Assembly: GCF_030684315.1 (NCBI RefSeq)
Contig: NC_081396.1
Location: forward strand, 5,208,001 to 5,272,000
DNA length: 64,000 nucleotides
Direction of reading: 5' to 3'
From: Stegostoma tigrinum
Lineage: Eukaryota
Within the stretch, counting starts at the first letter, position 1. Each line of letters starts with the position of its first letter. The notes beneath the pieces were generated by a model that worked only from the letters and a program-made list of their open reading frames with translations, searched no databases and was not told where the DNA came from. Position numbers and translations under genes: made by a program. Positions 7,632 to 60,229 of this stretch are shown here, piece by piece.

Positions 7632-7659
7632 ATAGAACATAGAACATAGAACATAGAAC
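7632..7659 (-). repeat. CR1 3'-terminal microsatellite (GTTCTAT)x4
   Basis: + strand ATAGAAC x4 directly after the 3' UTR; CR1 elements end in short tandem repeats. Confidence 0.9.
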
Positions 7660-7727
7660 AGTACAGCACAGAACAGGCCCTTCAGCCCACAATGTTGTGC
7701 CGACCATTGATCCTCATGGATGCACCC

Positions 7728-10700
7728 TCAAATTTCTGTGACCATATGCATGTCCAGCAGTCTCTTAAATGACCCCAATGACCTTGCTTCCACAACTGCT
7801 GCTGGCAACGCATTCCATGCTCTCACAACTCTCTGCGTAAAGAACCTGCCTCTGACATCCCCTCTATACTTTCCACCAACCAGCTTAAAACTATGACCCC
7901 TCGTGCTAGCCATTTCTGCCCTGGGAAATAGTCTCTGGCTATCGACTCTATCAATGCCTCTCATTATCTTGTATACCTCAATTAGGTCCCCTCTCCTCCT
8001 CCTTTTCTCCAATGAAAAGAGACCGAGCTCAGTCAACCTCTCTTCATAAGATAAGCCCTCCAGTCCAGGCAGCATCCTGGTAAACCTCCTCTGAACCCTC
8101 TCCAAAGCATCCACATCTTTCCTATAATAGGGCGCCCAGAACTGGACGCAGTATTCCAAGTGCGGTCTAACCAAAGTTTTATAGAGCTGCAACAAGATCT
8201 CACGACTCTTAAACTCAATCCCCCTGTTAATGAAAGCCAAAACACCATATGCTTTCTTAACAACCCTGTCCACTTGGGTGGCCATTTTAAGGGATCTATG
8301 TATCTGCACACCAAGATCCCTCTGTTCCTCCACGCTGCCAAGAATCCTATCCTTAATCCTGTACTCAGCTTTCAAATTCGACCTTCCAAAATGCATCACC
8401 TCGCATTTATCCAGGTTGAACTCCATCTGCCACCTCTCAGCCCATCTCTGCATCCTGTCAATGTCCCGCTGCAGCCTACAACAGCCCTCTACACTGTCAA
8501 CGACACCTCCGACCTTTGTGTCGTCTGCAAACTTGCTGACCCATCCTTCAATTCCCTCGTCCAAGTCATTAATAAAAATTACAAACAGTAGAGGCCCAAG
8601 GACAGAGCCCTGTGGAACCCCACTCACCACTGACTTCCAGGCAGAATATTTTCCTTCTACTACCACACGCTGTCTTCTGTTGGCCAGCCAATTCTGTATC
8701 CAAGCAGCTAAGTTCCCCTGTATCCCATTCCTCCTGACCTTCTGAATGAGCCTTCCATGGGGAACCTTATCAAATGCCTTACTGAAGTCCATATACACCA
8801 CATCCACAGCTCGACCCTCATCAACCTTACTAGTCACATCCTCAAAAAACTCGATAAGGTTTGTAAGGCATGACCTACCCCTCACAAAGCCGTGTTGACT
8901 GTATTTGATCAAGCCATGCTCTTCCAGATGGTCATAAATCTTATCCCTCAGAATCCTTTCTAACACCTTGCAGACGACAGACGTGAGACTTACCGGTCTA
9001 TAATTGCCGGGGATTTCCCTATTTCCTTTCTTGAAGAGAGGAATTACATTTGCCTCTCTCCAGTCCTCAGGTACGACTCCAGTGGAGAGCGAGGATGCAA
9101 AGATCTTCGCAAGTGGCGAAGCAATTGCATTTCTCGCTTCCCAAAGCAGCCGAGGACAAATCTGATCCGGGCCTGGCGACTTGTCAATCTTAATGTTTGA
9201 CAAAATTTTCAGTACATCAGCTTCCTCTATCTCTATCCATTCCAGCATGCACACCTGCTCTTCAAAGGTTTCATTCACTACACAGTTCGATTCTTTCGTA
9301 AAGACAGAAGCAAAAAACTCATTTAGGGCTTCCCCTACCTCCTCAGGCTCCACACACAAGTTCCCTATGCTATCCCTGATCGGCCCTACTCTTTCTTTGA
9401 CCATTCTCTTATTCCTCACGTAAGTGTAAAATGCCTTTGTGTTTTCCCGGATTCCTTCTGCCAAGCCTTTCTCGTGCCCCCTCCTGGCTCTCCTCAGACC
9501 ATTTTTGAGCTCCTTCCTTGCCTGCATGTAATCCTCTCTAGCTGAACTTGACCCTAGCTTCCTCCACCTTATGTAAGCTACCTTCTTCCTTTTCACTAGA
9601 AGCTCCACCGCTCTCGTCATCCAAGGTTCCTTTATCTTACCCCTTCTTGCCTGTCTCAGAGGGACATATTTACTCATCACTCCCAACAACTGTTCCTTAA
9701 ACCATCTCCACATGTCTATAGTTCCCTTACCATGGAACAACTGCTCCCAGTCCATGCTTCCTAACTCGTGTCTAATCGCATCATAGTTTCCTCTTCCCCA
9801 ATTAAATATCCTCCCATTCTGCCTAATCCTCTCCTTCTCCATAGCTATGTAGAATGAGAGAGTGTTATGGTCACTATCACCAAAATGCTCTCCCACCACA
9901 AGATCTGATACCTGCCCCGGCTCGTTTCCGAGCACCAAGTCTAGAATGGCCTCTCCCCTCGTCGGCCTGTCAACGTACTGCGTTAGGAAACCCTCCTGAA
10001 CACACCTTACAAAAACAGCTCCATTCAAATCTTCTGCTCGAAGGAGGTTCCAATCAATATTAGGAAAGTTAAAGTCACCCATTACAACAACCCTACTGCG
10101 TCCACACTTTTCCAAAATCTGTCGACCTATGCTTTCTACAATCTCCCTGCTGCTATTGGGGGGCCTGTAGTAAACCCCTAACGAGGTGACTACTCCCTTG
10201 CTGTTCCTAATTTCCACCCATACTGACTCAGCAGGCAGATCTTCCTCGACAATGGAAGCTTCTGTAGCTGTGATACTCTCTCTGATTAGTAGTGCTACAC
10301 CCCCTCCTCTTTTTCCCCCCTCCCTATTCTTTTTAAATGTTCTAAACCCTGGAACATCCAGCAACCATTCCTGCCCATGAGAAACCCATGTCTCTGTTAT
10401 GGCCACAACATCATAGCACCAGGTACTGATCCATGCTCTAAGTTCATCACTTTTATTCCTGATACTCCTTGCATTAAAGCAAACACACTTTAACCGATCC
10501 CTTGGTTCCTTCCCAGGAAAATCCTTCCCACTAGCTGGTCTACCTCTTGCTACTGCCTCACCTGCATCAACGCTCACCTCTGGTATACAGCTCAGGTTCC
10601 CACCCCCCTGCCATACTAGTTTAAACCCTCTCGAACTACTCGAGCAAACCTTCCACCCAGGACATTGGTCCCCTTCCAGTTCAGATGCAACCCGTCCTTC

Positions 10701-10736
10701 TTGTACAGGTCCCACCTTCCCCAGAAGGCATCCCAA
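7728..10736 (-). CDS. CR1 ORF2: APE-like endonuclease + reverse transcriptase. No AUG before the endonuclease; probably entered at ~10619 by a -1 frameshift
   Basis: EN motifs FNARS, ITETW, GGGVAL, YRPP, GDFN, LDLV, SDH. RT motifs NYRPVSLTS, QHGF, DFSKAFD, GVPQGSVLGP, FADD. CR1-type C-terminus (RPHLEYCVQFW, RVVRAWNALP). The track start at 10736 is TTG; the first ATG is at 10082 (residue 219). Confidence 0.96.
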   Translation of the reverse strand: MGCLLGKVGPVQEGRVASELEGDQCPGWKVCSSSSRGFKLVWQGGGNLSCIPEVSVDAGEAVARGRPASGKDFPGKEPRDRLKCVCFNARSIRNKSDELRAWISTWCYDVVAITETWVSHGQEWLLDVPGFRTFKKNREGGKRGGGVALLIRESITATEASIVEEDLPAESVWVEIRNSKGVVTSLGVYYRPPNSSREIVESIGRQILEKCGRSRVVVMGDFNFPNIDWNLLRAEDLNGAVFVRCVQEGFLTQYVDRPTRGEAILDLVLGNEPGQVSDLVVGEHFGDSDHNTLSFYIAMEKERIRQNGRIFNWGRGNYDAIRHELGSMDWEQLFHGKGTIDMWRWFKEQLLGVMSKYVPLRQARRGKIKEPWMTRAVELLVKRKKVAYIRWRKLGSSSAREDYMQARKELKNGLRRARRGHEKGLAEGIRENTKAFYTYVRNKRMVKERVGPIRDSIGNLCVEPEEVGEALNEFFASVFTKESNCVVNETFEEQVCMLEWIEIEEADVLKILSNIKIDKSPGPDQICPRLLWEARNAIASPLAKIFASSLSTGVVPEDWREANVIPLFKKGNREIPGNYRPVSLTSVVCKVLERILRDKIYDHLEEHGLIKYSQHGFVRGRSCLTNLIEFFEDVTSKVDEGRAVDVVYMDFSKAFDKVPHGRLIQKVRRNGIQGNLAAWIQNWLANRRQRVVVEGKYSAWKSVVSGVPQGSVLGPLLFVIFINDLDEGIEGWVSKFADDTKVGGVVDSVEGCCRLQRDIDRMQRWAERWQMEFNLDKCEVMHFGRSNLKAEYRIKDRILGSVEEQRDLGVQIHRSLKMATQVDRVVKKAYGVLAFINRGIEFKSREILLQLYKTLVRPHLEYCVQFWAPYYRKDVDALERVQRRFTRMLPGLEGLSYEERLTELGLFSLEKRRRRGDLIEVYKIMRGIDRVDSQRLFPRAEMASTRGHSFKLVGGKYRGDVRGRFFTQRVVRAWNALPAAVVEARSLGSFKRLLDMHMVTEI

Positions 10737-11551
10737 TTATCAACATATCTGAAGCCCTCCCTCCTACACCAGCTGCGTAGCCACGTGTTCAGCTGCGCCC
10801 GCTCCCTGTTCCTCACCTCGCTATCTCGTGGCACCGGTAGTAAACCAGAGAACACTACTCTGTTCGTCCTGCTCTGCAGCTTCCATCCTAACTCCCTGAA
10901 ATCACTTTTTATATCCTCAAACCTATTTCTGGCTATATCATTTGTGCCAATATGTAACACGATTTCTGGCTGTTCACCCTCCCCTTTCAGAACTTTATAC
11001 ACCCGATCGGAGACGTCCCGGACCCTGGCACCAGGGAGGCAACATACCTTCCGGGAATCCCGATCTTGCCCACAAAATCTCCTGTCGATTCCCCTAACTA
11101 TCGAGTCCCCTACCACGAGTACTTTTCTATTCTGCCCCCTTCCCTTCTTTGCCACAGTGTCAGGCTCAGTGCGAGAGAACTGACTACTATGGCTTTCCTC
11201 TGGTAGGTCAACCCCCCCAGCAGTATCCAAAACGGTATACTTATTGCTGAGGGGAATGCCCACAGGGGATCTCTGCACTGTCTGTCTGTCCCCTTTCCTC
11301 CCCCTAACTGTAACCCATCTATCCTCGTCCTGAGCCTTAGGAGTGACCAACTCCCGATAACTCCTCTCAATTACCCCCTCAGCCTCCCGAATGATCCGTA
11401 GTTCATCCAGCTCCAGCTCCATTTCCCTAACACGGTTTTCAAGGAGCTGTAGCTGGGTGCACTTCCCGCAGATGTAGCCAGCGGAGACGTGTGCCACATC
11501 TCCCAACTGCCACATTTTGCAGGAGGAGCAAGCAACTGCCCTAGCATCCAT
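10616..11551 (-). CDS. CR1 ORF1 (311 aa): CxxC...CxxC zinc-binding N-terminus, coiled coil, SGNH/GDSL esterase domain
   Basis: ATG at 11551 (MDARAVACSSC...YICGKC), heptad segment LQLLENRVREMELELDEL, SGNH blocks GDS / PGAR / GTND / DGLH, TAG at 10616-10618. It is the first sense-strand AUG of the element. Confidence 0.92.
   Translation of the reverse strand: MDARAVACSSCKMWQLGDVAHVSAGYICGKCTQLQLLENRVREMELELDELRIIREAEGVIERSYRELVTPKAQDEDRWVTVRGRKGDRQTVQRSPVGIPLSNKYTVLDTAGGVDLPEESHSSQFSRTEPDTVAKKGRGQNRKVLVVGDSIVRGIDRRFCGQDRDSRKVCCLPGARVRDVSDRVYKVLKGEGEQPEIVLHIGTNDIARNRFEDIKSDFRELGWKLQSRTNRVVFSGLLPVPRDSEVRNRERAQLNTWLRSWCRREGFRYVDNWDAFWGRWDLYKKDGLHLNWKGTNVLGGRFARVVREGLN
10619..10628 (-). promoter_or_regulatory. 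Putative -1 programmed ribosomal frameshift site (G_GGU_UUA_AAC) at the ORF1/ORF2 junction
   Basis: ORF1 frame reads GAG GGT TTA AAC TAG. The -1 frame reads TTT AAA CTA GTA TGG CAG, which is ORF2 (FKLVWQ). Confidence 0.7.
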
Positions 11552-11752
11552 ACCCCACTTATCTGAACACCCACTCAATACTAAAGCAGAAAGCTCACTT
11601 CAAGTAATAATAACAAATTAATAACAAACTTATGTTCAATAGAGAAAGTTTAGAATGAACCTTACCTTATTAACTAGGTTAGAGGAGGAGGGCGGGTGGG
11701 AGACACTACAGTTGTAGAGTCTCGGGTTAAGCCGCCTTGCTGATATATATGG

Positions 11753-13482
11753 TCACTGCTTTCCTTCCCGGCTGCCCCTCTGGTCCTCGTCACTTCCTCT
11801 GATGCTCCCGCTCCTTCTCTGAAAGAGGAAAAAAAAACACCGCTGCCCGCTACCGGTAAGTAATTTTAAAAATAAACTGCTTTACCTTAGCTGCAGTCTT
11901 CCGGGTCCGTCTTGCCTCCGCTGCTGCTCGCACTCAAAAAGGCCGTTGGCGTCGAAGGGTGAGTATTTATACTCACTGCTTTCCTTCCCGGCTGCCCCTC
12001 TGGTCCTCGTCACTTCCTCTGATGCTCCCGCTCCTTCTCTGAAAGAGGAAAAAAAAACACCGCTGCCCGCTACCGGTAAGTAATTTTAAAAATAAACTGC
12101 TTTACCTTAGCTGCAGTCTTCCGGGTCCGTCTTGCCTCCGCTGCTGCTCGCACTCAAAAAGGCCGTTGGCGTCGAAGGGTGAGTATTTATACTCACTGCT
12201 TTCCTTCCCGGCTGCCCCTCTGGTCCTCGTCACTTCCTCTGATGCTCCCGCTCCTTCTCTGAAAGAGGAAAAAAAAACACCGCTGCCCGCTACCGGTAAG
12301 TAATTTTAAAAATAAACTGCTTTACCTTAGCTGCAGTCTTCCGGGTCCGTCTTGCCTCCGCTGCTGCTCGCACTCAAAAAGGCCGTTGGCGTCGAAGGGT
12401 GAGTATTTATACTCACTGCTTTCCTTCCCGGCTGCCCCTCTGGTCCTCGTCACTTCCTCTGATGCTCCCGCTCCTTCTCTGAAAGAGGAAAAAAAAACAC
12501 CGCTGCCCGCTACCGGTAAGTAATTTTAAAAATAAACTGCTTTACCTTAGCTGCAGTCTTCCGGGTCCGTCTTGCCTCCGCTGCTGCTCGCACTCAAAAA
12601 GGCCGTTGGCGTCGAAGGGTGAGTATTTATACTCACTGCTTTCCTTCCCGGCTGCCCCTCTGGTCCTCGTCACTTCCTCTGATGCTCCCGCTCCTTCTCT
12701 GAAAGAGAAAAAAAAAACACCGCTGCCCGCTACCGGTAAGTAATTTTAAAAATAAACTGCTTTACCTTAGCTGCAGTCTTCCGGGTCCGTCTTGCCTCCG
12801 CTGCTGCTCGCACTCAAAAAGGCCGTTGGCGTCGAAGGGTGAGTATTTATACTCACTGCTTTCCTTCCCGGCTGCCCCTCTGGTCCTCGTCACTTCCTCT
12901 GATGCTCCCGCTCCTTCTCTGAAAGAGGAAAAAAAAACACCGCTGCCCGCTACCGGTAAGTAATTTTAAAAATAAACTGCTTTACCTTAGCTGCAGTCTT
13001 CCGGGTCCGTCTTGCCTCCGCTGCTGCTCGCACTCAAAAAGGCCGTTGGCGTCGAAGGGTGAGTATTTATACTCACTGCTTTCCTTCCCGGCTGCCCCTC
13101 TGGTCCTCGTCACTTCCTCTGATGCTCCCGCTCCTTCTCTGAAAGAGGAAAAAAAAACACCGCTGCCCGCTACCGGTAAGTAATTTTAAAAATAAACTGC
13201 TTTACCTTAGCTGCAGTCTTCCGGGTCCGTCTTGCCTCCGCTGCTGCTCGCACTCAAAAAGGCCGTTGGCGTCGAAGGGTGAGTATTTATACTCACTGCT
13301 TTCCTTCCCGGCTGCCCCTCTGGTCCTCGTCACTTCCTCTGATGCTCCCGCTCCTTCTCTGAAAGAGAAAAAAAAAACACCGCTGCCCGCTACCGGTAAG
13401 TAATTTTAAAAATAAACTGCTTTACCTTAGCTGCAGTCTTCCGGGTCCGTCTTGCCTCCGCTGCTGCTCGCACTCAAAAAGG
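11753..13482 (-). repeat. Tandem array of 220-bp monomers (~7.9 copies) forming the LINE 5' UTR
   Basis: TTCCTTCCCG recurs at 11761, 11981, 12201, 12421, 12641, 12861, 13081 and 13301. The only difference seen between copies is G>A at 12708 and 13368. Confidence 0.98.
13256..13291 (-). promoter_or_regulatory. Putative core promoter of each monomer: TATAAATA followed 30 nt later by CCTTTTT (TCT/TOP-like initiator); outermost complete copy shown
   Basis: The minus strand reads GTGAG-TATAAATA-CTCACCCTTCGACGCCAACGG-CCTTTTTG. TATA starts at 11971+220n (7 copies). AGAGGAAGTGACG (ETS plus half-CRE) lies upstream and CCGGAAG downstream. Confidence 0.6.
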
Positions 13483-13860
13483 ATGTGATTGCACACGAAA
13501 GATTGCTAGAGTGATTTCTCACATGATAGTGTTATTAGATAAGTATAGACTCGTGAGTCAAGACCAGGATTGTCTAGAAATTAGACGATTGCAAAGTGCC
13601 CTTCTTAAGATAGCTGAAGTCAAACAGGCGTCGACAGGATAGGTGTAGGAAGGATTTTTCCCTTGCTTGAAAATTGCGAAGTAGGAAATCCGTACCAGAA
13701 AAAGTGTGCGATGAAGTTTGGTTGAGCTGCAGGGAAATTTCGTCAGTCAGTGGAAATCTCCATATCGCATGGTTTTGGAGGCTGAATCATGCCGATGAGT
13801 ACAACAGAAGTCAACAGATAGAAGTAGAAACGATTGGAGAACCTCAACAGTTCGGGTAGA
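13481..13860 (+). mobile_element. Old degraded CR1, 3' part continuing after the young insertion
   Basis: GGATGTGATTGCACACGAAAG continues the CR1 C-terminal frame; decayed 3' region follows. Confidence 0.7.
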
Positions 13861-20959: not shown

Positions 20960-21585
20960 TGTTGAGAATTCTTTGTCTCTGGCATGCTTGTCTTCATTGT
21001 TCAGTTCGTTGAGTCGAAGAATTGGGAAGTCATGTTGAGGTTGTGTAGTACATTCTCGAGACTTCTTCTGGAATACTGCGTCTATTTCTGGTGGCCCTAT
21101 TTTACGAAGGATATTATTAAGCTGGAGAGTATCCGGAGCAGGTTCAACAGGATGTAGCCGCATATGGAAGAGTTGAATTAAAAAGAAGGGCTGGATAGGC
21201 TGGAATTATTTTCGCCAGAGCTGAGGACGTCCAGAGGCGACCTCATCGATTTTTTTAAAATAATGTGAGTTCTACATAGAGTTAATTGTAGTCGACCTTT
21301 CCTTACGAGGGATATTTTAAGACTGGCACATTTTAAATGCGAGAAGAGAAGGTTGTAACAAAAGAAATGAATGGCATTCTTTTTAACACATAACTTCCCA
21401 AGGAAGCAGTAGATGCTACTACAATTGCAACGTTCAAAAGATATTTGGATAGAGACATGAATAGGAAAGGCTTTCAGGGATATGGGCGAGGGGCAAGCGA
21501 AAGGAAATAGTTTAGTATGTGATTCTGTTCGGCATGAACTTGTTGGACCAGAAGGTCTTTTTTCAGTGCTGTATGATTCTATCAC
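20960..21585 (+). mobile_element. 5'-truncated degraded CR1 3' end
   Basis: LLLEYCVYFWWPYF, RGDLI and the typical tail ...GGACCAGAAGGTCTTTTTTCAGTGCTGTATGATTCTAT. Confidence 0.85.
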
Positions 21586-31232: not shown

Positions 31233-31287
31233 AACATAGAACAGTACAGCAGAGAACAGGCCCTTCAGCCCACAATGTTGTGCCGAC
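31233..31287 (-). mobile_element. 55-bp 3'-terminal fragment of the young CR1 family
   Basis: Matches ~7650-7704 except for one substitution (GCAGAG vs GCACAG). Confidence 0.85.
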
Positions 31288-39347: not shown

Positions 39348-42300
39348 GGTGCACTCTGTGTTTGTAATCAATCAGTCTGGAAATAAAAAGCGTCTGTCCG
39401 AGATCCCTGTTAAGAGCTGTTCCACTCAATTCCGAACAGTGATGGCAACTGTGATCTCTCAAACATCAAAACGGGAAGAAAAGTGTGTCAGAGCCACAGC
39501 AACAAATTGAATCTGAGAGAGCAACAAACTTAGACTCCGCTCAGAGTGAATACATTCTGCTGTGCGAGAACAGAAAAACTGCGACTACCATCAGCTGCAT
39601 CCGGATCCGATGGAGGTTGAGATCTCTGTAACCCCATTGCCCGCTCAGAAACAGAATCACTGAGGAACAAATCGAGGGGGAGGTAATAAAAGGTCGCGGA
39701 TTTTATAATACAGACTGCAATTTTCGGCCCACTGCGACTGTGCCTGCTCTTTGATACATCCATGCAATTAATTTCAGAGCTGGAGCTGTTTCCACATTCG
39801 GTAGCTCTGCACATGTTATTTCTTTCAAAGTGGCTTTACAATACCATTCTGAAATTTAGCACTATTTCTACCTCCACTTACATCGGAAATTCTAGATTGT
39901 AATAATGTTCAATGATTAAAATAAAGCATTCTTTCCTTGTCAATTCTGTTGATCTTGTTCCTGAGGTCCCCAACCTCCATGCACCTGAAAAGAATTAGCT
40001 ATGTTCAATGCCATCAAACCAAGTTTTAGGACTCAGCAGTTCAGTAAACCATTTGTTAAGCTTGCTTTGACAAAAGGAGAATAATATTGTGCCGCCTCAC
40101 TGTACATGATTCACGTGTCTTATCATCTTTTGTTTCTGCAAATCAATAAATTCCTGTCCCTCACATGCTGCCTGATCTCTGGGCTGAATTTCGAAATCCA
40201 TATCTGCCGTCCGTCCTCCACTCCCAATTTTCTCCCTGTTTCCGTACCCTCTATCTATTCTCTGTTACCCAAATCCTGCCTGTTGGTTGCGATTCGAATC
40301 GAAGAGACTGATTCAAAATTTTGGATCTGCAGAGACTCTTTGTCATTCAAAATAATTTACAAGGCTGACCAAAACATTCCCTGGTGCTGTCTTAGTGGTG
40401 AATTTGCTCTTTCAACACCATCAAATTGCTTCGATTGCTAGTCAGGAAATGGGGATTTGGTCTTGTTGTAGAAAATCTTAAAATTTCCGATGTAAGTGGA
40501 GGTAGAAATAGTGCTAAATTTCAGAATGGTATTGTAAAGCCACTTAGAAAGAAATAAAATGTGCAAAGCTACCGAATGTGGAAACAGCTCCAGCTGTGAA
40601 ATTAATTGCATGAATTCCTGGCTTAAAACGCAACAAAGACAGAGGCAGAGCAGCACTACCAAATTCAGTAATAGTTTCTCATCATATGTGAAGGTATCAC
40701 ATCGGGCCAGAGGAAGATGGCAAGAATGAGTTAAAGAAATTAACTGTAATCATCTGGGAAGAATCGTATCAGAAACATAGGTCTTCTGTTTTATTTTCTT
40801 TTCATTTTTTTTCAATGAAACTCCATGCTAAGTTATGAGTTTCTTTTTGCAATGGAGATTAGAATCATCTCGAGACCCGCAAAGAAAATCAGAGATATCC
40901 TCCCAGAGTGAGAATGGTCTGTACAGTGACAGACCCTCAGAGAGGAAGGATATTCCCTATCGGTCTGAGATTCTTTTTCTCTTTGCGGCCTCCAATTTCT
41001 GGGTCCCTGGGAATGAAATGAAACGAGAAAACGGGCTCAATTTTATACCGTAAACTCTGGGCGATTGGTGAACTTCATGAGAGTCAGTGATGGAAACTAA
41101 GATAGGACATAAGATGCAGTCGAGGTGACATCAATTTCATTGAGTCCTAAACACACTACCTTAACTTCTCGATCACTGTCCTGACAAGGAAACATGTGCA
41201 AACGGTTTTCATATCAGCTGCACTGCAAAGTATTTCACAGTTGTGTCTCTGCGGACTTTATGAAAAAAAACAACACGTTCACCACTTTGAAAGACATTGG
41301 TACTCCTTGTTCTTCTGATCAGAAAGATCCAGACAAATGCCTGTGTTCATTGGAACAGCACTTACTCACTACAAGACACAAAGATGAACGTGAAATGGAG
41401 CCCAATATTTCAACTGCACTTCAAAGAGACAGAAACTGAAACCCTACACGCGATCATAGCAGCACTCAAGTGCCCTCTAATGGTCAGTTATCGCCACTAC
41501 AATGGGACATTGAGTAGGTGTTCAGGGCACTCGATCCTGATTTTCCCTCATCAGGTCCTGGGATAAGATGAGTCTCAAAGTGAATTTTCCACGCAATCCC
41601 GACAGACGTCCGTTCATTTCGAACCGTACATGTCTGCATTTAAGACTTCATTATCCACCAAGTATCCACATACCTGTGGGCTGGAGAATTCAAAAGAGAC
41701 ACAGGCGTTTCACATATGAAAAGGATATCCATAATTGTTAACACCAATATTCTGCACATGTTTGAATCAGACATCCACTTGCAGGCCAACTTGTTAATGA
41801 GGGTTTAAATCATTCCCACATGCATATTTTCTGAAGGAGGCAGTACTTCTCACACAAAATTATGGAAAAGCTTCCAATCGCTTTTTACCCGCACCTCCTC
41901 CTGAAGGTTGGCATTCAGTGTTATCAGCATGTGCTCCTAGATTTTATGCCGACCCGCTCTCTGTCGTCATTCTAAAATCAGATTCGCTTCAACACCCAAC
42001 ATAAAGACAATTACCAACCTGATGGATGAAAAACAGCGCACAAATCATTCACTGATGTAATTCCAATGGAACTCATTTGCAGATTCACAACATCAACTTT
42101 TGAAACAAATGAAGGAACATTGCTGGCATAAGTTTCGAGAAGTTGGCATGACATTTACTTGTGACTCATTCATTCGATTGTACAAACAAGTTTAGAGTTT
42201 CAGTGAGCGGGTTACAATCTAACTTTTCTGCTTTTTCTGTTCTCCTTAAATGTGAGTTGACATAGGGAGAACCATTGCTGGGTTTGTTTGAATTCAAACA

Positions 42301-58800: not shown

Positions 58801-60229
58801 AACATCTTCTCGACTAATAATGACCTTTCAATAAATTCAATCACTTTTGCAATGATCCCAGACTTTCAAATCTGGGAATTACTCTGGCACTATTTGATTG
58901 ACATTATGGCGACCAGGCAACTATTCACCCGCAGTGACAGTTGTCATAAGACAATACATAATAATGCTTAATTGATTGAAACATTTTTTTCTTAATCATC
59001 CATCCTTAACTGACCTTCAAAAGACGGTGAACTGTATTTTTGAATCACGCACAACATTTTGTTTAGTTTGAATGACAATGCCACTAGTACGGGGATCAAA
59101 ATCCTGGAACATTGCCTGAAGATTTCCTGTGTCAAACTATACCTCACGATTATAAAATGTCAAAAAGGCAGCTCAGCACCACTTTTCTACGGAAAACTAG
59201 AAAATAACAATAAATGTTGTCCCAGTCATTTGTCCCACTCATTGAAAATTAATGATTTAAATGTCCCTCTCTTTAATTCAATGAAGTAGTTTTAAAACAA
59301 CTTCATCAATGTTATCACGTCAGGAGCACAATTAGTTCCTGTTCACACCTTAATAAGAAGACATTAACAGATCATTAGCATTTATTGGAATAACACACTA
59401 CATCTGGAATTTCATGTAACTAACAATGTGATCATTCGCCAATGCCAATAACACACTAGGTGTCCATTTACACTGTGATTCTAGTACTTTATGTGTCCTC
59501 AAAGTGGCAATAACAAAAAAAAATGAGTTTACACCATAATAATTTTGCACCAATTGTCCCTCAAACGCATTGCTAGTAATTACAGGAAAACAGCATTCAA
59601 TCGATGGGGAAAAAATTATCACCCGCCATGACTGCGAATAAAACAAGATAACCATGTTTCTACAGTGAGGTAGTAGGAGTAACTGGAAGAAAATTATTAA
59701 GATAGTGAAATGGCGTCTGTCTCACTGAGGCACACAAGACGTAATGGGTAAATTAGGCATTTTGCAAGAAGAAGCTATGCAGATTTTTATCTAGCTACAT
59801 ATTTCACGTTATCGGTCAATTTTTTTTCCTTATCTGATATACTTTGTGCATTTTTTCACACCATTATACTTCTAAAATCGTTTTACCTCGCTTGTTAAGT
59901 CATTGACTGAGATTTTTTTTCTAAATAAATGCTTTAATTTCTCTCATTTAAATTTTATAATAACAGTTAATCTGCATAGTTTCTTCTTGCAAAATGCCTA
60001 ATTTACCCTTTACGTCTTGTGTGCCTCAGTGAGACAGACGCCATTTCACTATCTTAATAATTTTCTTCCAGTTACTCCTACTACCTCACTGTAGAAAATG
60101 AAGATTTGATGCAGTGCACCTATAGACCACTCAGACAAGACAGAAGACATATACTTCACCCGGCACTCCGATTGCTGCAACAACTGGATAGTAAATGGCA
60201 AATACCAGACCTTTGGGTATTCCGTGCAT
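55803..60229 (-). CDS. Intact GPR139-like class A (rhodopsin-family) GPCR, 322 aa; exon 1 60160-60229, exon 2 55803-56701
   Basis: Exon 1 encodes MHGIPKGLVFAIYYPVVAAIGVP with G|GTGAAG; acceptor TTTTACAG at 56702. The 969-nt spliced ORF has seven hydrophobic segments, GVPAN (TM1), MAVSD (TM2), TM3 Cys, TFDRF, ECL2 WFC and NPFIY. Orthology to GPR139 itself is not established. Confidence 0.93.
57230..57780 (+). mobile_element. 5'-truncated CR1 3' end within the GPCR intron
   Basis: YRKDVINMDRIQKRFIKM, RRDLIEIYKIM, WNELPEEV and a CR1 tail. Confidence 0.9.
59657..60097. repeat. Near-perfect inverted repeat (129-bp arms, 183-bp spacer); MITE-like element or foldback
   Basis: 59657-59785 is the reverse complement of 59969-60097 with 2 mismatches. 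ATG flanks both ends. Confidence 0.97.

What the first reader, a model, noticed from the sequence alone, without database searches (positions are those of the whole stretch)
11753..13482. Tandem-monomer promoter: the LINE's 5' end sits ~30 nt downstream of the missing next monomer's TATA box, at a TCT/TOP motif
Seen: each 220-bp monomer (sense strand) contains AGAGGAAGTGACG (ETS plus half-CRE), TATAAATA, then CCTTTTTG 30 nt later. TATA starts fall at 11971+220n, so the next would be at 13511. The element ends at 13478-13482 (ambiguous because of AAGG microhomology), about 29-33 nt downstream, at that CCTTTTT. Established: TATA lies at about -30; YC+1TYTYY is the TCT initiator of ribosomal-protein genes, which yields 5'TOP mRNAs; mouse L1 uses monomer arrays. 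Inference: this is a complete transcript copy that started from an upstream monomer's promoter. Each cycle would cost one monomer, so the array would have to be regenerated, and the RNA may be under TOP-type (mTORC1/LARP1) translational control. I do not know of this architecture being described for CR1.
Basis: partly seen in the sequence, partly recalled or inferred. Interest (0 to 1): 0.85.

Follow-up and report, generated by a model that had tools for sequence, protein, structure and literature searches.

The report
Shark CR1 LINE with monomer promoter
An intact, young CR1 jumping gene in a shark genome carries eight near-identical 220-base promoter-like units at its front and begins exactly where the TATA box of a missing ninth unit would start transcription, which is the logic known from mouse L1 seen in another LINE clade, though no start site was measured.

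Summary
A 220-bp unit repeats 7.86 times at 11753-13482, and the copies differ at one position only. The array is the 5' leader of an intact minus-strand CR1 (esterase ORF1, EN-RT ORF2, (GTTCTAT)4 tail). Each unit has AGAGGAAGTGACG, then TATAAATA, then CCTTTTT 29 nt later. The element ends at that CCTTTTT; the end is ambiguous over 13480-13482 because of a possible 3-bp TCC duplication.

Evidence that the array is a transcribed promoter/leader:
- The 1,931-nt sense leader has no ATG.
- CpG o/e is 0.92, against 0.4-0.5 elsewhere in the element.
- Contigs of a second species link ~85%-similar tandem units to the CR1 leader.

The phased-start model matches what is established for mouse L1 monomers (PMC6454616). 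Here it rests on one copy, plus an unchecked note from this scan (s1-881734) making the same claim for another CR1 copy 4.9 Mb away in the same genome. No raw RNA reads were available.

TOP/mTORC1 control is speculation. One related contig appears to read an Inr-like TCATTTG at that site instead. Repeating 5' subunits in CR1-group elements are already mentioned in print (PMC13343379). Verdict: a new variant of a known kind, of moderate interest.

The parts
7632..7660 (-). 3' tail of the element, (GTTCTAT)4 on the sense strand, followed by flank TCCCCCGAT
7728..10736 (-). ORF2, open for 1002 codons, with endonuclease and reverse transcriptase domains. It lies in the -1 frame relative to ORF1 and has no ATG until codon 219.
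10616..11551 (-). ORF1, 311 aa from ATG 11551, with a CxxC...CxxC N-terminus and a GDSL/SGNH esterase domain. It is 99% identical to a Stegostoma tigrinum protein.
11552..11752 (-). Non-repeated tether of the 5' leader. It holds a TATA-like ATATATAT at 11743-11750 where the units have TATAAATA, and an 85-nt intron-like stretch at 11581-11665 (AAG|GTAAGG ... TTTAG|).
11753..13482 (-). Array of 7.86 units of 220 bp with GC 52% and CpG o/e 0.92. The sense strand has no ATG.
13284..13291 (-). 5'-most TATAAATA, one of seven at 11964-11971+220n. It is the centre of the palindrome GTGAGTAT-AA-ATACTCAC.
13476..13482 (-). CCTTTTT at the element's 5' end. The same motif begins each unit at 11942+220n, which are the predicted start sites inside this copy (13262 down to 11942).
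13328..13340 (-). AGAGGAAGTGACG (GGAA core plus TGACG), one of eight at 11788-11800+220n, 65-78 nt upstream of the next CCTTTTT. A second CCGGAAG lies at unit position 39.
13360..13426 (-). 67-nt mini-intron-like stretch (AAG|GTAAAG ... T-run CCTCTTTCAG|AG), one of eight at 11820-11886+220n
13483..13560 (-). Upstream flank, unrelated to the unit. It has no TATA at the -30 position, so the first CCTTTTT of this copy has no promoter of its own.

Best explanation
This is a young, coding-intact CR1-type LINE, probably in the zebra shark, whose promoter is a tandem array of 220-bp units. Each unit carries GGAA/ETS-type sites and a TATA box near its 3' end, so RNA polymerase II starts about 30 nt further on, at the CCTTTTT that opens the next unit. 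A TATA promoter lies upstream of its start site and would normally be left behind by a LINE. Repeating it makes it internal: a transcript started by unit n still carries units n+1 onward. This copy is a complete cDNA of an RNA that started in this way in a parent with at least one more unit. Its own first CCTTTTT therefore has no TATA in front of it. Its progeny would start at 13262 or further in and carry fewer units. Arrays must be regrown by duplication of units, by an unknown mechanism.

Shown: the anatomy, the spacing, the ATG-free and CpG-rich leader, and the linkage of the units to CR1 in a second species. Inferred: the start site, the activity of each unit, and regrowth.
For: - Array and exact spacing. 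The first T of the TATA box is at unit position 192, and the next unit begins 29 nt later.
- The element ends at 13480-13482 in that phase, and the flank has no TATA.
- Intact ORF1 and ORF2 with the expected domains.
- A 99%-identical ORF1 with four residue differences is on record from Stegostoma tigrinum. This suggests a second recent copy, although an allelic or individual variant of the same copy is not excluded.
- No ATG in 1,931 nt of sense leader, against 11 on the other strand. The shuffle probability is 0.013 for a unit and 0.025 for the tether.
- CpG o/e is 0.92 in the array against 0.41-0.53 in the ORFs and flanks, as in L1 promoters (PMC5381506).
- In a second species, contigs bridge the tether into similar units (X10 record 11, X16 record 23) and run 326 nt across more than one period (X10 record 15).
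- A LINE copy holds only what was transcribed, so units that persist in copies must lie downstream of a start site.
- Mouse L1 shows the same logic, backed by CAGE (PMC6454616).
- TATA boxes are over-represented at human TCT promoters (10.1101/2025.11.21.689830).
- Unit variants run T-C-C-T-C-C-C-C, which fits a three-unit block duplication.
Against: - Only one 5' end was examined. The second, in note s1-881734, is an unchecked reading.
- No RNA start data exist. The only raw reads were bisulfite DNA, and the loose-end table was swamped by conversion artefacts.
- The motif matches (ETS, CRE half-site, TATA, TCT) are consensus matches only.
- The 3-bp TCC ambiguity leaves the first base undecided.
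- All eight units keep splice-site-like signals. If these were used, they would complicate a simple leader.
- The copy number in the assembly was not checked with long reads.
Confidence: 0.58

Rival explanations
1. The 5' end is an ordinary 5' truncation or end-joining point inside a longer array, and its position 29-31 nt after the TATA phase is coincidence. The units may still be a promoter, with starts elsewhere.
For: Only one copy was seen. Most LINE copies are 5'-truncated (PMC6454616). A possible TCC microhomology sits at the junction.
Against: The chance of landing within 3 of 220 positions is about 1-3%. The site is also one of only two initiator-type matches in the unit. An unchecked note reports the same for another copy.
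Confidence: 0.15
2. The units act mainly as an enhancer or leader module rather than as separate promoters. Transcription starts at one dominant site, either at the array's upstream end under host read-through or in the tether behind ATATATAT. The array grows and shrinks by unequal exchange at the locus.
For: There are several GGAA cores per unit and a TATA-like box in the tether at the position corresponding to the units' TATA. The near-identity of the units fits recent local duplication.
Against: Starts in the tether alone would yield copies without units, yet units are linked to CR1 in two species. The flank shows no promoter or transduced sequence. The leader is ATG-free throughout.
Confidence: 0.15
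3. Each unit is a gene-like promoter, first exon and mini-intron module. The main product is a spliced mRNA with a short leader: the 56-nt first exon joined to the acceptor 29 nt before the ORF1 ATG. Only the unspliced fraction is copied back into DNA.
For: Donor AAG|GTAAAG and acceptor T-run CAG| occur in every unit. The tether holds a second intron-like stretch of 85 nt, and its donor sits at the same distance from its TATA-like box (87 nt against 86). A sawfish gene model named RPS24 isoform X2 is a CR1 ORF1 over its whole length, which hints that an acceptor upstream of ORF1 can be used.
Against: No spliced joint at these sites appeared among the joints listed (74 were not shown). In the second species the stretch holding the unit's donor is replaced in the single contig of each run that shows it, and the acceptor G is changed in nearly all contigs. 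All eight genomic units keep the intron.
Confidence: 0.1

Closest known systems
Mouse (and rat) L1 monomer promoters: A, Tf and Gf types
   Same: Tandem units of about 200 bp at the 5' end, a non-repeated tether before ORF1, and CpG-island character. Mouse arrays average 4-6 units and reach up to 17. [quoted passage not shown] Upstream sequence is lost per cycle and the regrowth mechanism is unknown (PMC6454616, PMC2894050, PMC5381506).
   Different: The clade differs (CR1 with esterase ORF1 and a microsatellite tail, not L1) and the unit sequence is unrelated. The core promoter here looks TATA-directed with a pyrimidine start, whereas mouse units use YY1 or AP-1-associated starts. The units here are practically identical within the copy. 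Nothing was measured here.
Repeating 5' subunits of CR1-group elements (Fig. 4 legend of PMC13343379)
   Same: Species-specific subunits of 100-500 bp repeated near the 5' UTR of CR1-group LINEs of vertebrates. Elasmobranchs are very rich in these elements.
   Different: That paper reports them for ORF1-less elements, with 1-5 subunits, and gives no promoter anatomy or 5'-end phase. This element has ORF1 and nearly 8 units.
Vertebrate TATA plus TCT/TOP core promoters of ribosomal-protein and translation genes
   Same: An exact YC+1TYTYY match about 30 nt after a TATA box, ETS-type sites upstream, and a short non-coding first-exon-like stretch followed by a small intron-like stretch. TATA is enriched at human TCT promoters (10.1101/2025.11.21.689830). 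TCT/TOP starts are known in fish (PMC6954239).
   Different: No start on C is shown and no translation data exist. The motif is apparently not kept in a related contig of another species (TCATTTG). No homology to a host gene could be tested.
Drosophila HeT-A/TART telomeric LINEs (recalled from memory for HeT-A; TART starts are in PMC1636488)
   Same: A promoter that lies upstream of the start is kept in the family by a head-to-tail arrangement, so one unit drives the next.
   Different: There the repeated unit is the whole element at a chromosome end. Here it is a 220-bp unit inside one element.

Membership tests
CR1-group LINE | ORF2 with apurinic-type endonuclease followed by reverse transcriptase | tested here: met
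   Pfam Exo_endo_phos 2.2e-18 and RVT_1 1.5e-34 in the 1002-codon ORF
CR1-group LINE | Esterase-type (SGNH/GDSL) ORF1 | tested here: met
   Lipase_GDSL_2 1.5e-13 and OSK 7.5e-08. Homologues occur across sharks and rays. PMC13343379 names the esterase as the only ORF1 type found in CR1 and L2.
CR1-group LINE | 3' end made of short repeats rather than poly(A) | tested here: met
   (GTTCTAT)4 at 7632-7660
CR1-group LINE | Placement of the RT inside the canonical CR1 clade rather than L2 or Rex1 | not tested
   No tree was built. Indirect support: PMC13343379 reports that galeomorph sharks lack L2.
Monomer-array LINE promoter (mouse L1 type) | Tandem units at the 5' end joined to ORF1 by a non-repeated tether | tested here: met
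   7.86 units of 220 bp plus a 201-nt tether
Monomer-array LINE promoter (mouse L1 type) | CpG-island character of the units | tested here: met
   GC 52% and CpG o/e 0.92, against 0.41-0.53 in the ORFs and flanks
Monomer-array LINE promoter (mouse L1 type) | A common truncation site of the 5'-most unit across copies, equal to the start site | tested here: inconclusive
   One copy ends in the TATA+29-31 phase. Other copies could not be fetched. Note s1-881734 is unchecked.
Monomer-array LINE promoter (mouse L1 type) | Promoter activity of the units, rising with their number | not testable with these tools
   Needs reporter assays
Monomer-array LINE promoter (mouse L1 type) | Units are part of the family, not a local satellite | tested here: met
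   Contigs of a second species bridge the tether into units and span more than one period at about 85% identity (X10 records 11 and 15, X16 record 23)
TATA + TCT/TOP core promoter | TATA box with its first T about 28-33 nt before the start | tested here: met
   Met as spacing to the element's 5' end and to each CCTTTTT, at 29-31 nt. The start itself is inferred.
TATA + TCT/TOP core promoter | YC+1TYTYY at the start, with transcription beginning on C | tested here: inconclusive
   The sequence match is exact. The first base is undecided because of the TCC ambiguity, and there are no RNA 5' ends.
TATA + TCT/TOP core promoter | Motif kept in related elements | tested here: inconclusive
   A loose-end consensus of 3 contigs of another species (X10, place 11955) reads ACGGTCATTTG on the sense strand where this copy has ACGGCCTTTTTG. 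Its median length is 11, so the part covering the start site rests on fewer of the three contigs. This is thin evidence that points against conservation.
TATA + TCT/TOP core promoter | mTORC1/LARP1-dependent translation | not testable with these tools
   Needs polysome or reporter work

The most novel reading that the evidence does not exclude
The unit is a copy or mimic of a ribosomal-protein-gene-type 5' end: ETS sites, a TATA box, a TCT initiator, a short non-coding first exon and a mini-intron. The LINE would then make TOP mRNAs whose translation follows growth signalling. Splicing of the leader would separate a protein-coding RNA with a short leader from the unspliced RNA that is copied back into the genome.
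Probability: 0.1. Interest if true: 0.8.

Novelty: new variant of a known kind. Interest (0 to 1): 0.5.

Why it matters
LINEs must carry their promoter inside the transcript. How CR1, the dominant retrotransposon of sharks, birds and reptiles, achieves this is poorly known. This copy shows a clean solution: an ordinary upstream TATA promoter made internal by tandem repetition, with the element's end in the predicted phase. If confirmed, this would be an independent origin of the mouse-L1 strategy in a distant clade and a distant host. It would provide a second system for studying how arrays are lost and regrown, and a precise, testable prediction of start sites at 11942+220n. It would also help annotate full-length, potentially active CR1 copies in elasmobranch genomes, a quarter to a third of which is made of such elements (PMC13343379).

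Tried and rejected
- **Collecting other copies.**
  - Two metagenome scans with ORF1 and with an ORF1 alignment gave nothing useful (one search found none; one search found one 35% relative).
  - The genome-contig scan gave a 506-bp fragment only.
  - The viral scans gave nothing.
  - The window holds no second copy, only two short 3'-end fragments.
- **Reads.**
  - The only raw reads were bisulfite DNA.
  - They could be laid at 80% likeness, but the listed loose ends were places where converted sequence stops aligning. No 5'-junction profile and no safe methylation call came out of it. G>A was seen at 165 places, against 194 non-CpG and 48 CpG Gs.
  - No listed run is on record as RNA; the 'RNA?' labels are guesses.
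- **Known RNA families.** Rfam gave no credible match (mir-971 at 21.8 bits against a gathering score of 53). The unit RNA folds no better than shuffles (z -0.06).
- **Tether as a diverged unit.** The global alignment is not better than shuffles (z 1.2), so only the shared spacing is reported.
- **Host-gene origin of the unit.** No animal genome collection was available, so this was not tested.
- **Satellite unrelated to CR1.** Rejected.
- **Literature.** Searches found no described TATA or TCT monomer promoter in CR1.

Full report
**The sequence**

Tandem Repeats Finder reports one array at 11753-13482 with period 220, 7.9 copies and 99% matches; the repeat finder agrees. The element runs on the minus strand. 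Phased from its 5' end there are seven units of 220 nt and a last one of 190 nt. They are identical except position 115, which is T in units 1 and 4 and C in the rest.

Downstream on the same strand lie the remaining parts of the element:
- a 201-nt non-repeated tether;
- ORF1, 311 aa from the ATG at 11551, with a GDSL/SGNH esterase domain;
- ORF2, 1002 open codons with endonuclease and reverse transcriptase domains;
- a (GTTCTAT)4 tail at 7632-7660.

This is the anatomy of a CR1-group LINE with an esterase ORF1. The best database relative of ORF1 is a Stegostoma tigrinum protein at 99% identity with four residue differences. The genome is therefore probably the zebra shark. The family looks young and possibly multi-copy, although an allelic or individual variant of this same copy would give the same result. 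Earlier notes from this scan place the window in a shark T-cell-receptor region.

The 44-nt string from GAGTATAAATA to CCTTTTTGAGTG occurs seven times without a mismatch. The first T of each TATAAATA is at 11971+220n, and a ninth would fall at 13511. The array stops at 13482, 29 nt downstream of that position. CCTTTTT is an exact match to YC+1TYTYY; the only other match in the unit lies in a pyrimidine tract at position 115. AGAGGAAGTGACG is present in all eight units, 65-78 nt before the next CCTTTTT.

The flank upstream of 13482 has no TATA. Instead, TCC on the sense strand stands both just before the 5' end and just after the 3' tail. If TCC is a 3-bp target duplication, the element starts at T (13480); if not, it starts at C (13481 or 13482). 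The distance to the TATA phase is 29-31 nt in either case, but the first base is undecided.

**Is the array a transcribed promoter and leader of the element?**

Four observations say yes.
1. The whole sense leader from 13482 to 11552 (1,931 nt) has no ATG, while the other strand has 11. Shuffles give no ATG in 1.3% of units and 2.5% of tethers. This is what a scanned leader before ORF1 needs.
2. The array has GC 52% and CpG o/e 0.92, whereas the ORFs, tether and flanks have 0.41-0.53. Mammalian L1 promoters show the same contrast (PMC5381506).
3. A LINE copy contains only what was transcribed, so units that travel with the family must lie downstream of a start site.
4. The units do travel with the family. 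When contigs of public runs were laid on 11000-12200, a second species gave contigs that bridge the tether into similar units (X10 record 11, 11681-11871; X16 record 23, 11680-11818). One contig runs 326 nt through more than one period at about 85% identity (X10 record 15).

**Is the 5' end a start site?**

The spacing is what a TATA-directed start predicts, and a random truncation would land within these three positions about once in 70. [quoted passage not shown] The need to regrow monomers is acknowledged there, with the mechanism unknown (PMC6454616). Promoter strength in mouse rises with monomer number (PMC2894050).

Here, however, it rests on one junction. I could not see that sequence, so it is a lead and not support.

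I could not collect further copies:
- the metagenome, prokaryote-genome and viral collections held none;
- the window has no second copy.

The only raw reads were bisulfite DNA, and their listed loose ends were conversion artefacts. No run is on record as RNA.

**The TCT/TOP reading**

A TATA box with a TCT start is a real vertebrate promoter type: TATA is over-represented at human TCT promoters (10.1101/2025.11.21.689830), and TCT/TOP starts are known in fish (PMC6954239). So the match is credible as a core promoter. Nothing shows a start on C. One loose-end consensus from the second species (X10, place 11955) reads ACGGTCATTTG on the sense strand where this copy has ACGGCCTTTTTG, which is an ordinary Inr-like CA start at the same place. 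That is three contigs at most, and fewer over the start site itself, since the median loose length is 11. If true, it supports an initiator at this position but argues against a conserved TOP feature. Translation control by mTORC1/LARP1 remains speculation.

**Other features of the unit**

- **Palindrome.** The TATA box is the centre of the palindrome GTGAGTAT-AA-ATACTCAC. The array's 3' boundary lies inside it: after GTGA the tether reads CCATATATAT, a TATA-like box at the same position.
- **Intron-like stretches.** Each unit holds a 67-nt stretch with a good donor, a pyrimidine tract and an acceptor, as note s1-882186 says. The tether holds another of 85 nt, and its donor lies 87 nt from the TATA-like box, against 86 nt in the units.
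- **Similarity of tether and unit.** The tether is not otherwise significantly similar to a unit (z 1.2).
- **Conservation of the splice signals.** In the second species the acceptor G is changed in nearly all contigs. The stretch with the unit's donor is replaced in the single contig of each run that shows it. No spliced joint was among those listed. I therefore rate a working intron as possible but unsupported.
- **RNA structure.** The unit RNA has no known family and no unusual fold.
- **Regrowth.** The variant pattern T-C-C-T-C-C-C-C fits one three-unit block duplication. The site is the end of a T-run, though, and may simply mutate often.

**What is known**

Besides mouse and rat L1, a 2026 survey of CR1-group elements notes, in a figure legend, repeating subunits of 100-500 bp (1-5 per array) near the 5' UTR of some ORF1-less elements (PMC13343379). 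My literature searches found no CR1 promoter described as TATA-bearing monomers with a phased 5' end.

**Verdict**

The promoter-array reading is well supported by anatomy. The exact start is plausible but unmeasured, and the TOP idea is unsupported. This is a new variant of a known kind and of moderate interest.

Noticed in passing
window 11820-11886 +220n, and 11581-11665: Every unit has a 67-nt intron-like stretch, and the tether has an 85-nt one. Donors lie 86 and 87 nt after the TATA or TATA-like box. Joining the first donor to the last acceptor would give an 85-nt leader before the ORF1 ATG.
   Followed up: partly
window 10616-10736: ORF2 is in the -1 frame, overlaps ORF1 by 121 nt and has no ATG until codon 219. 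An in-phase U UUA AAC heptamer (10619-10625) stands directly before the ORF1 stop, as other notes of this scan report for other copies.
   Followed up: partly
window 11552-13482, minus strand: There is no ATG in the 1,931-nt sense leader, against 11 on the opposite strand.
   Followed up: yes
window 13368 and 12708 (unit position 115): The only variable site of the array is T in units 1 and 4 and C elsewhere. This fits a 660-bp block duplication, or repeated change at the end of a T-run. Copies in other runs also vary in the length of this run (table 4).
   Followed up: partly
protein P0023: A Pristis pectinata protein named '40S ribosomal protein S24 isoform X2' aligns over its whole length with CR1 ORF1 (58% identity). 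It is probably a gene model that joins an RPS24 first exon to a CR1 inserted in that gene.
   Followed up: partly
protein P0005: A protein filed as SGNH/GDSL hydrolase of Pseudomonas aeruginosa is 67% identical to this shark CR1 ORF1 and sits on a 4.2-kb contig. It is probably vertebrate contamination in a bacterial assembly.
   Followed up: no
window 11584-11729 and 11872-11908: In contigs of a second species these stretches of the tether and of the unit are replaced by 12 and 6-9 other letters. Many contigs of the first species diverge at 11677 and 11733. The 5' leader is therefore a mosaic that differs between subfamilies, while ORF1 is shared.
   Followed up: partly
window 39758-40615 and 59657-60097: Two inverted-repeat pairs were found: arms of 137 nt at 96% complementarity with 584 nt between them, and arms of 129 nt at 98% with 183 nt between them. 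They may be small foldback or MITE-like elements.
   Followed up: no
window 31233-31287 and 21069-21154: Short fragments match the 3' end of this CR1 (98% over 55 nt, 74% over 86 nt). They are probably heavily 5'-truncated copies.
   Followed up: no
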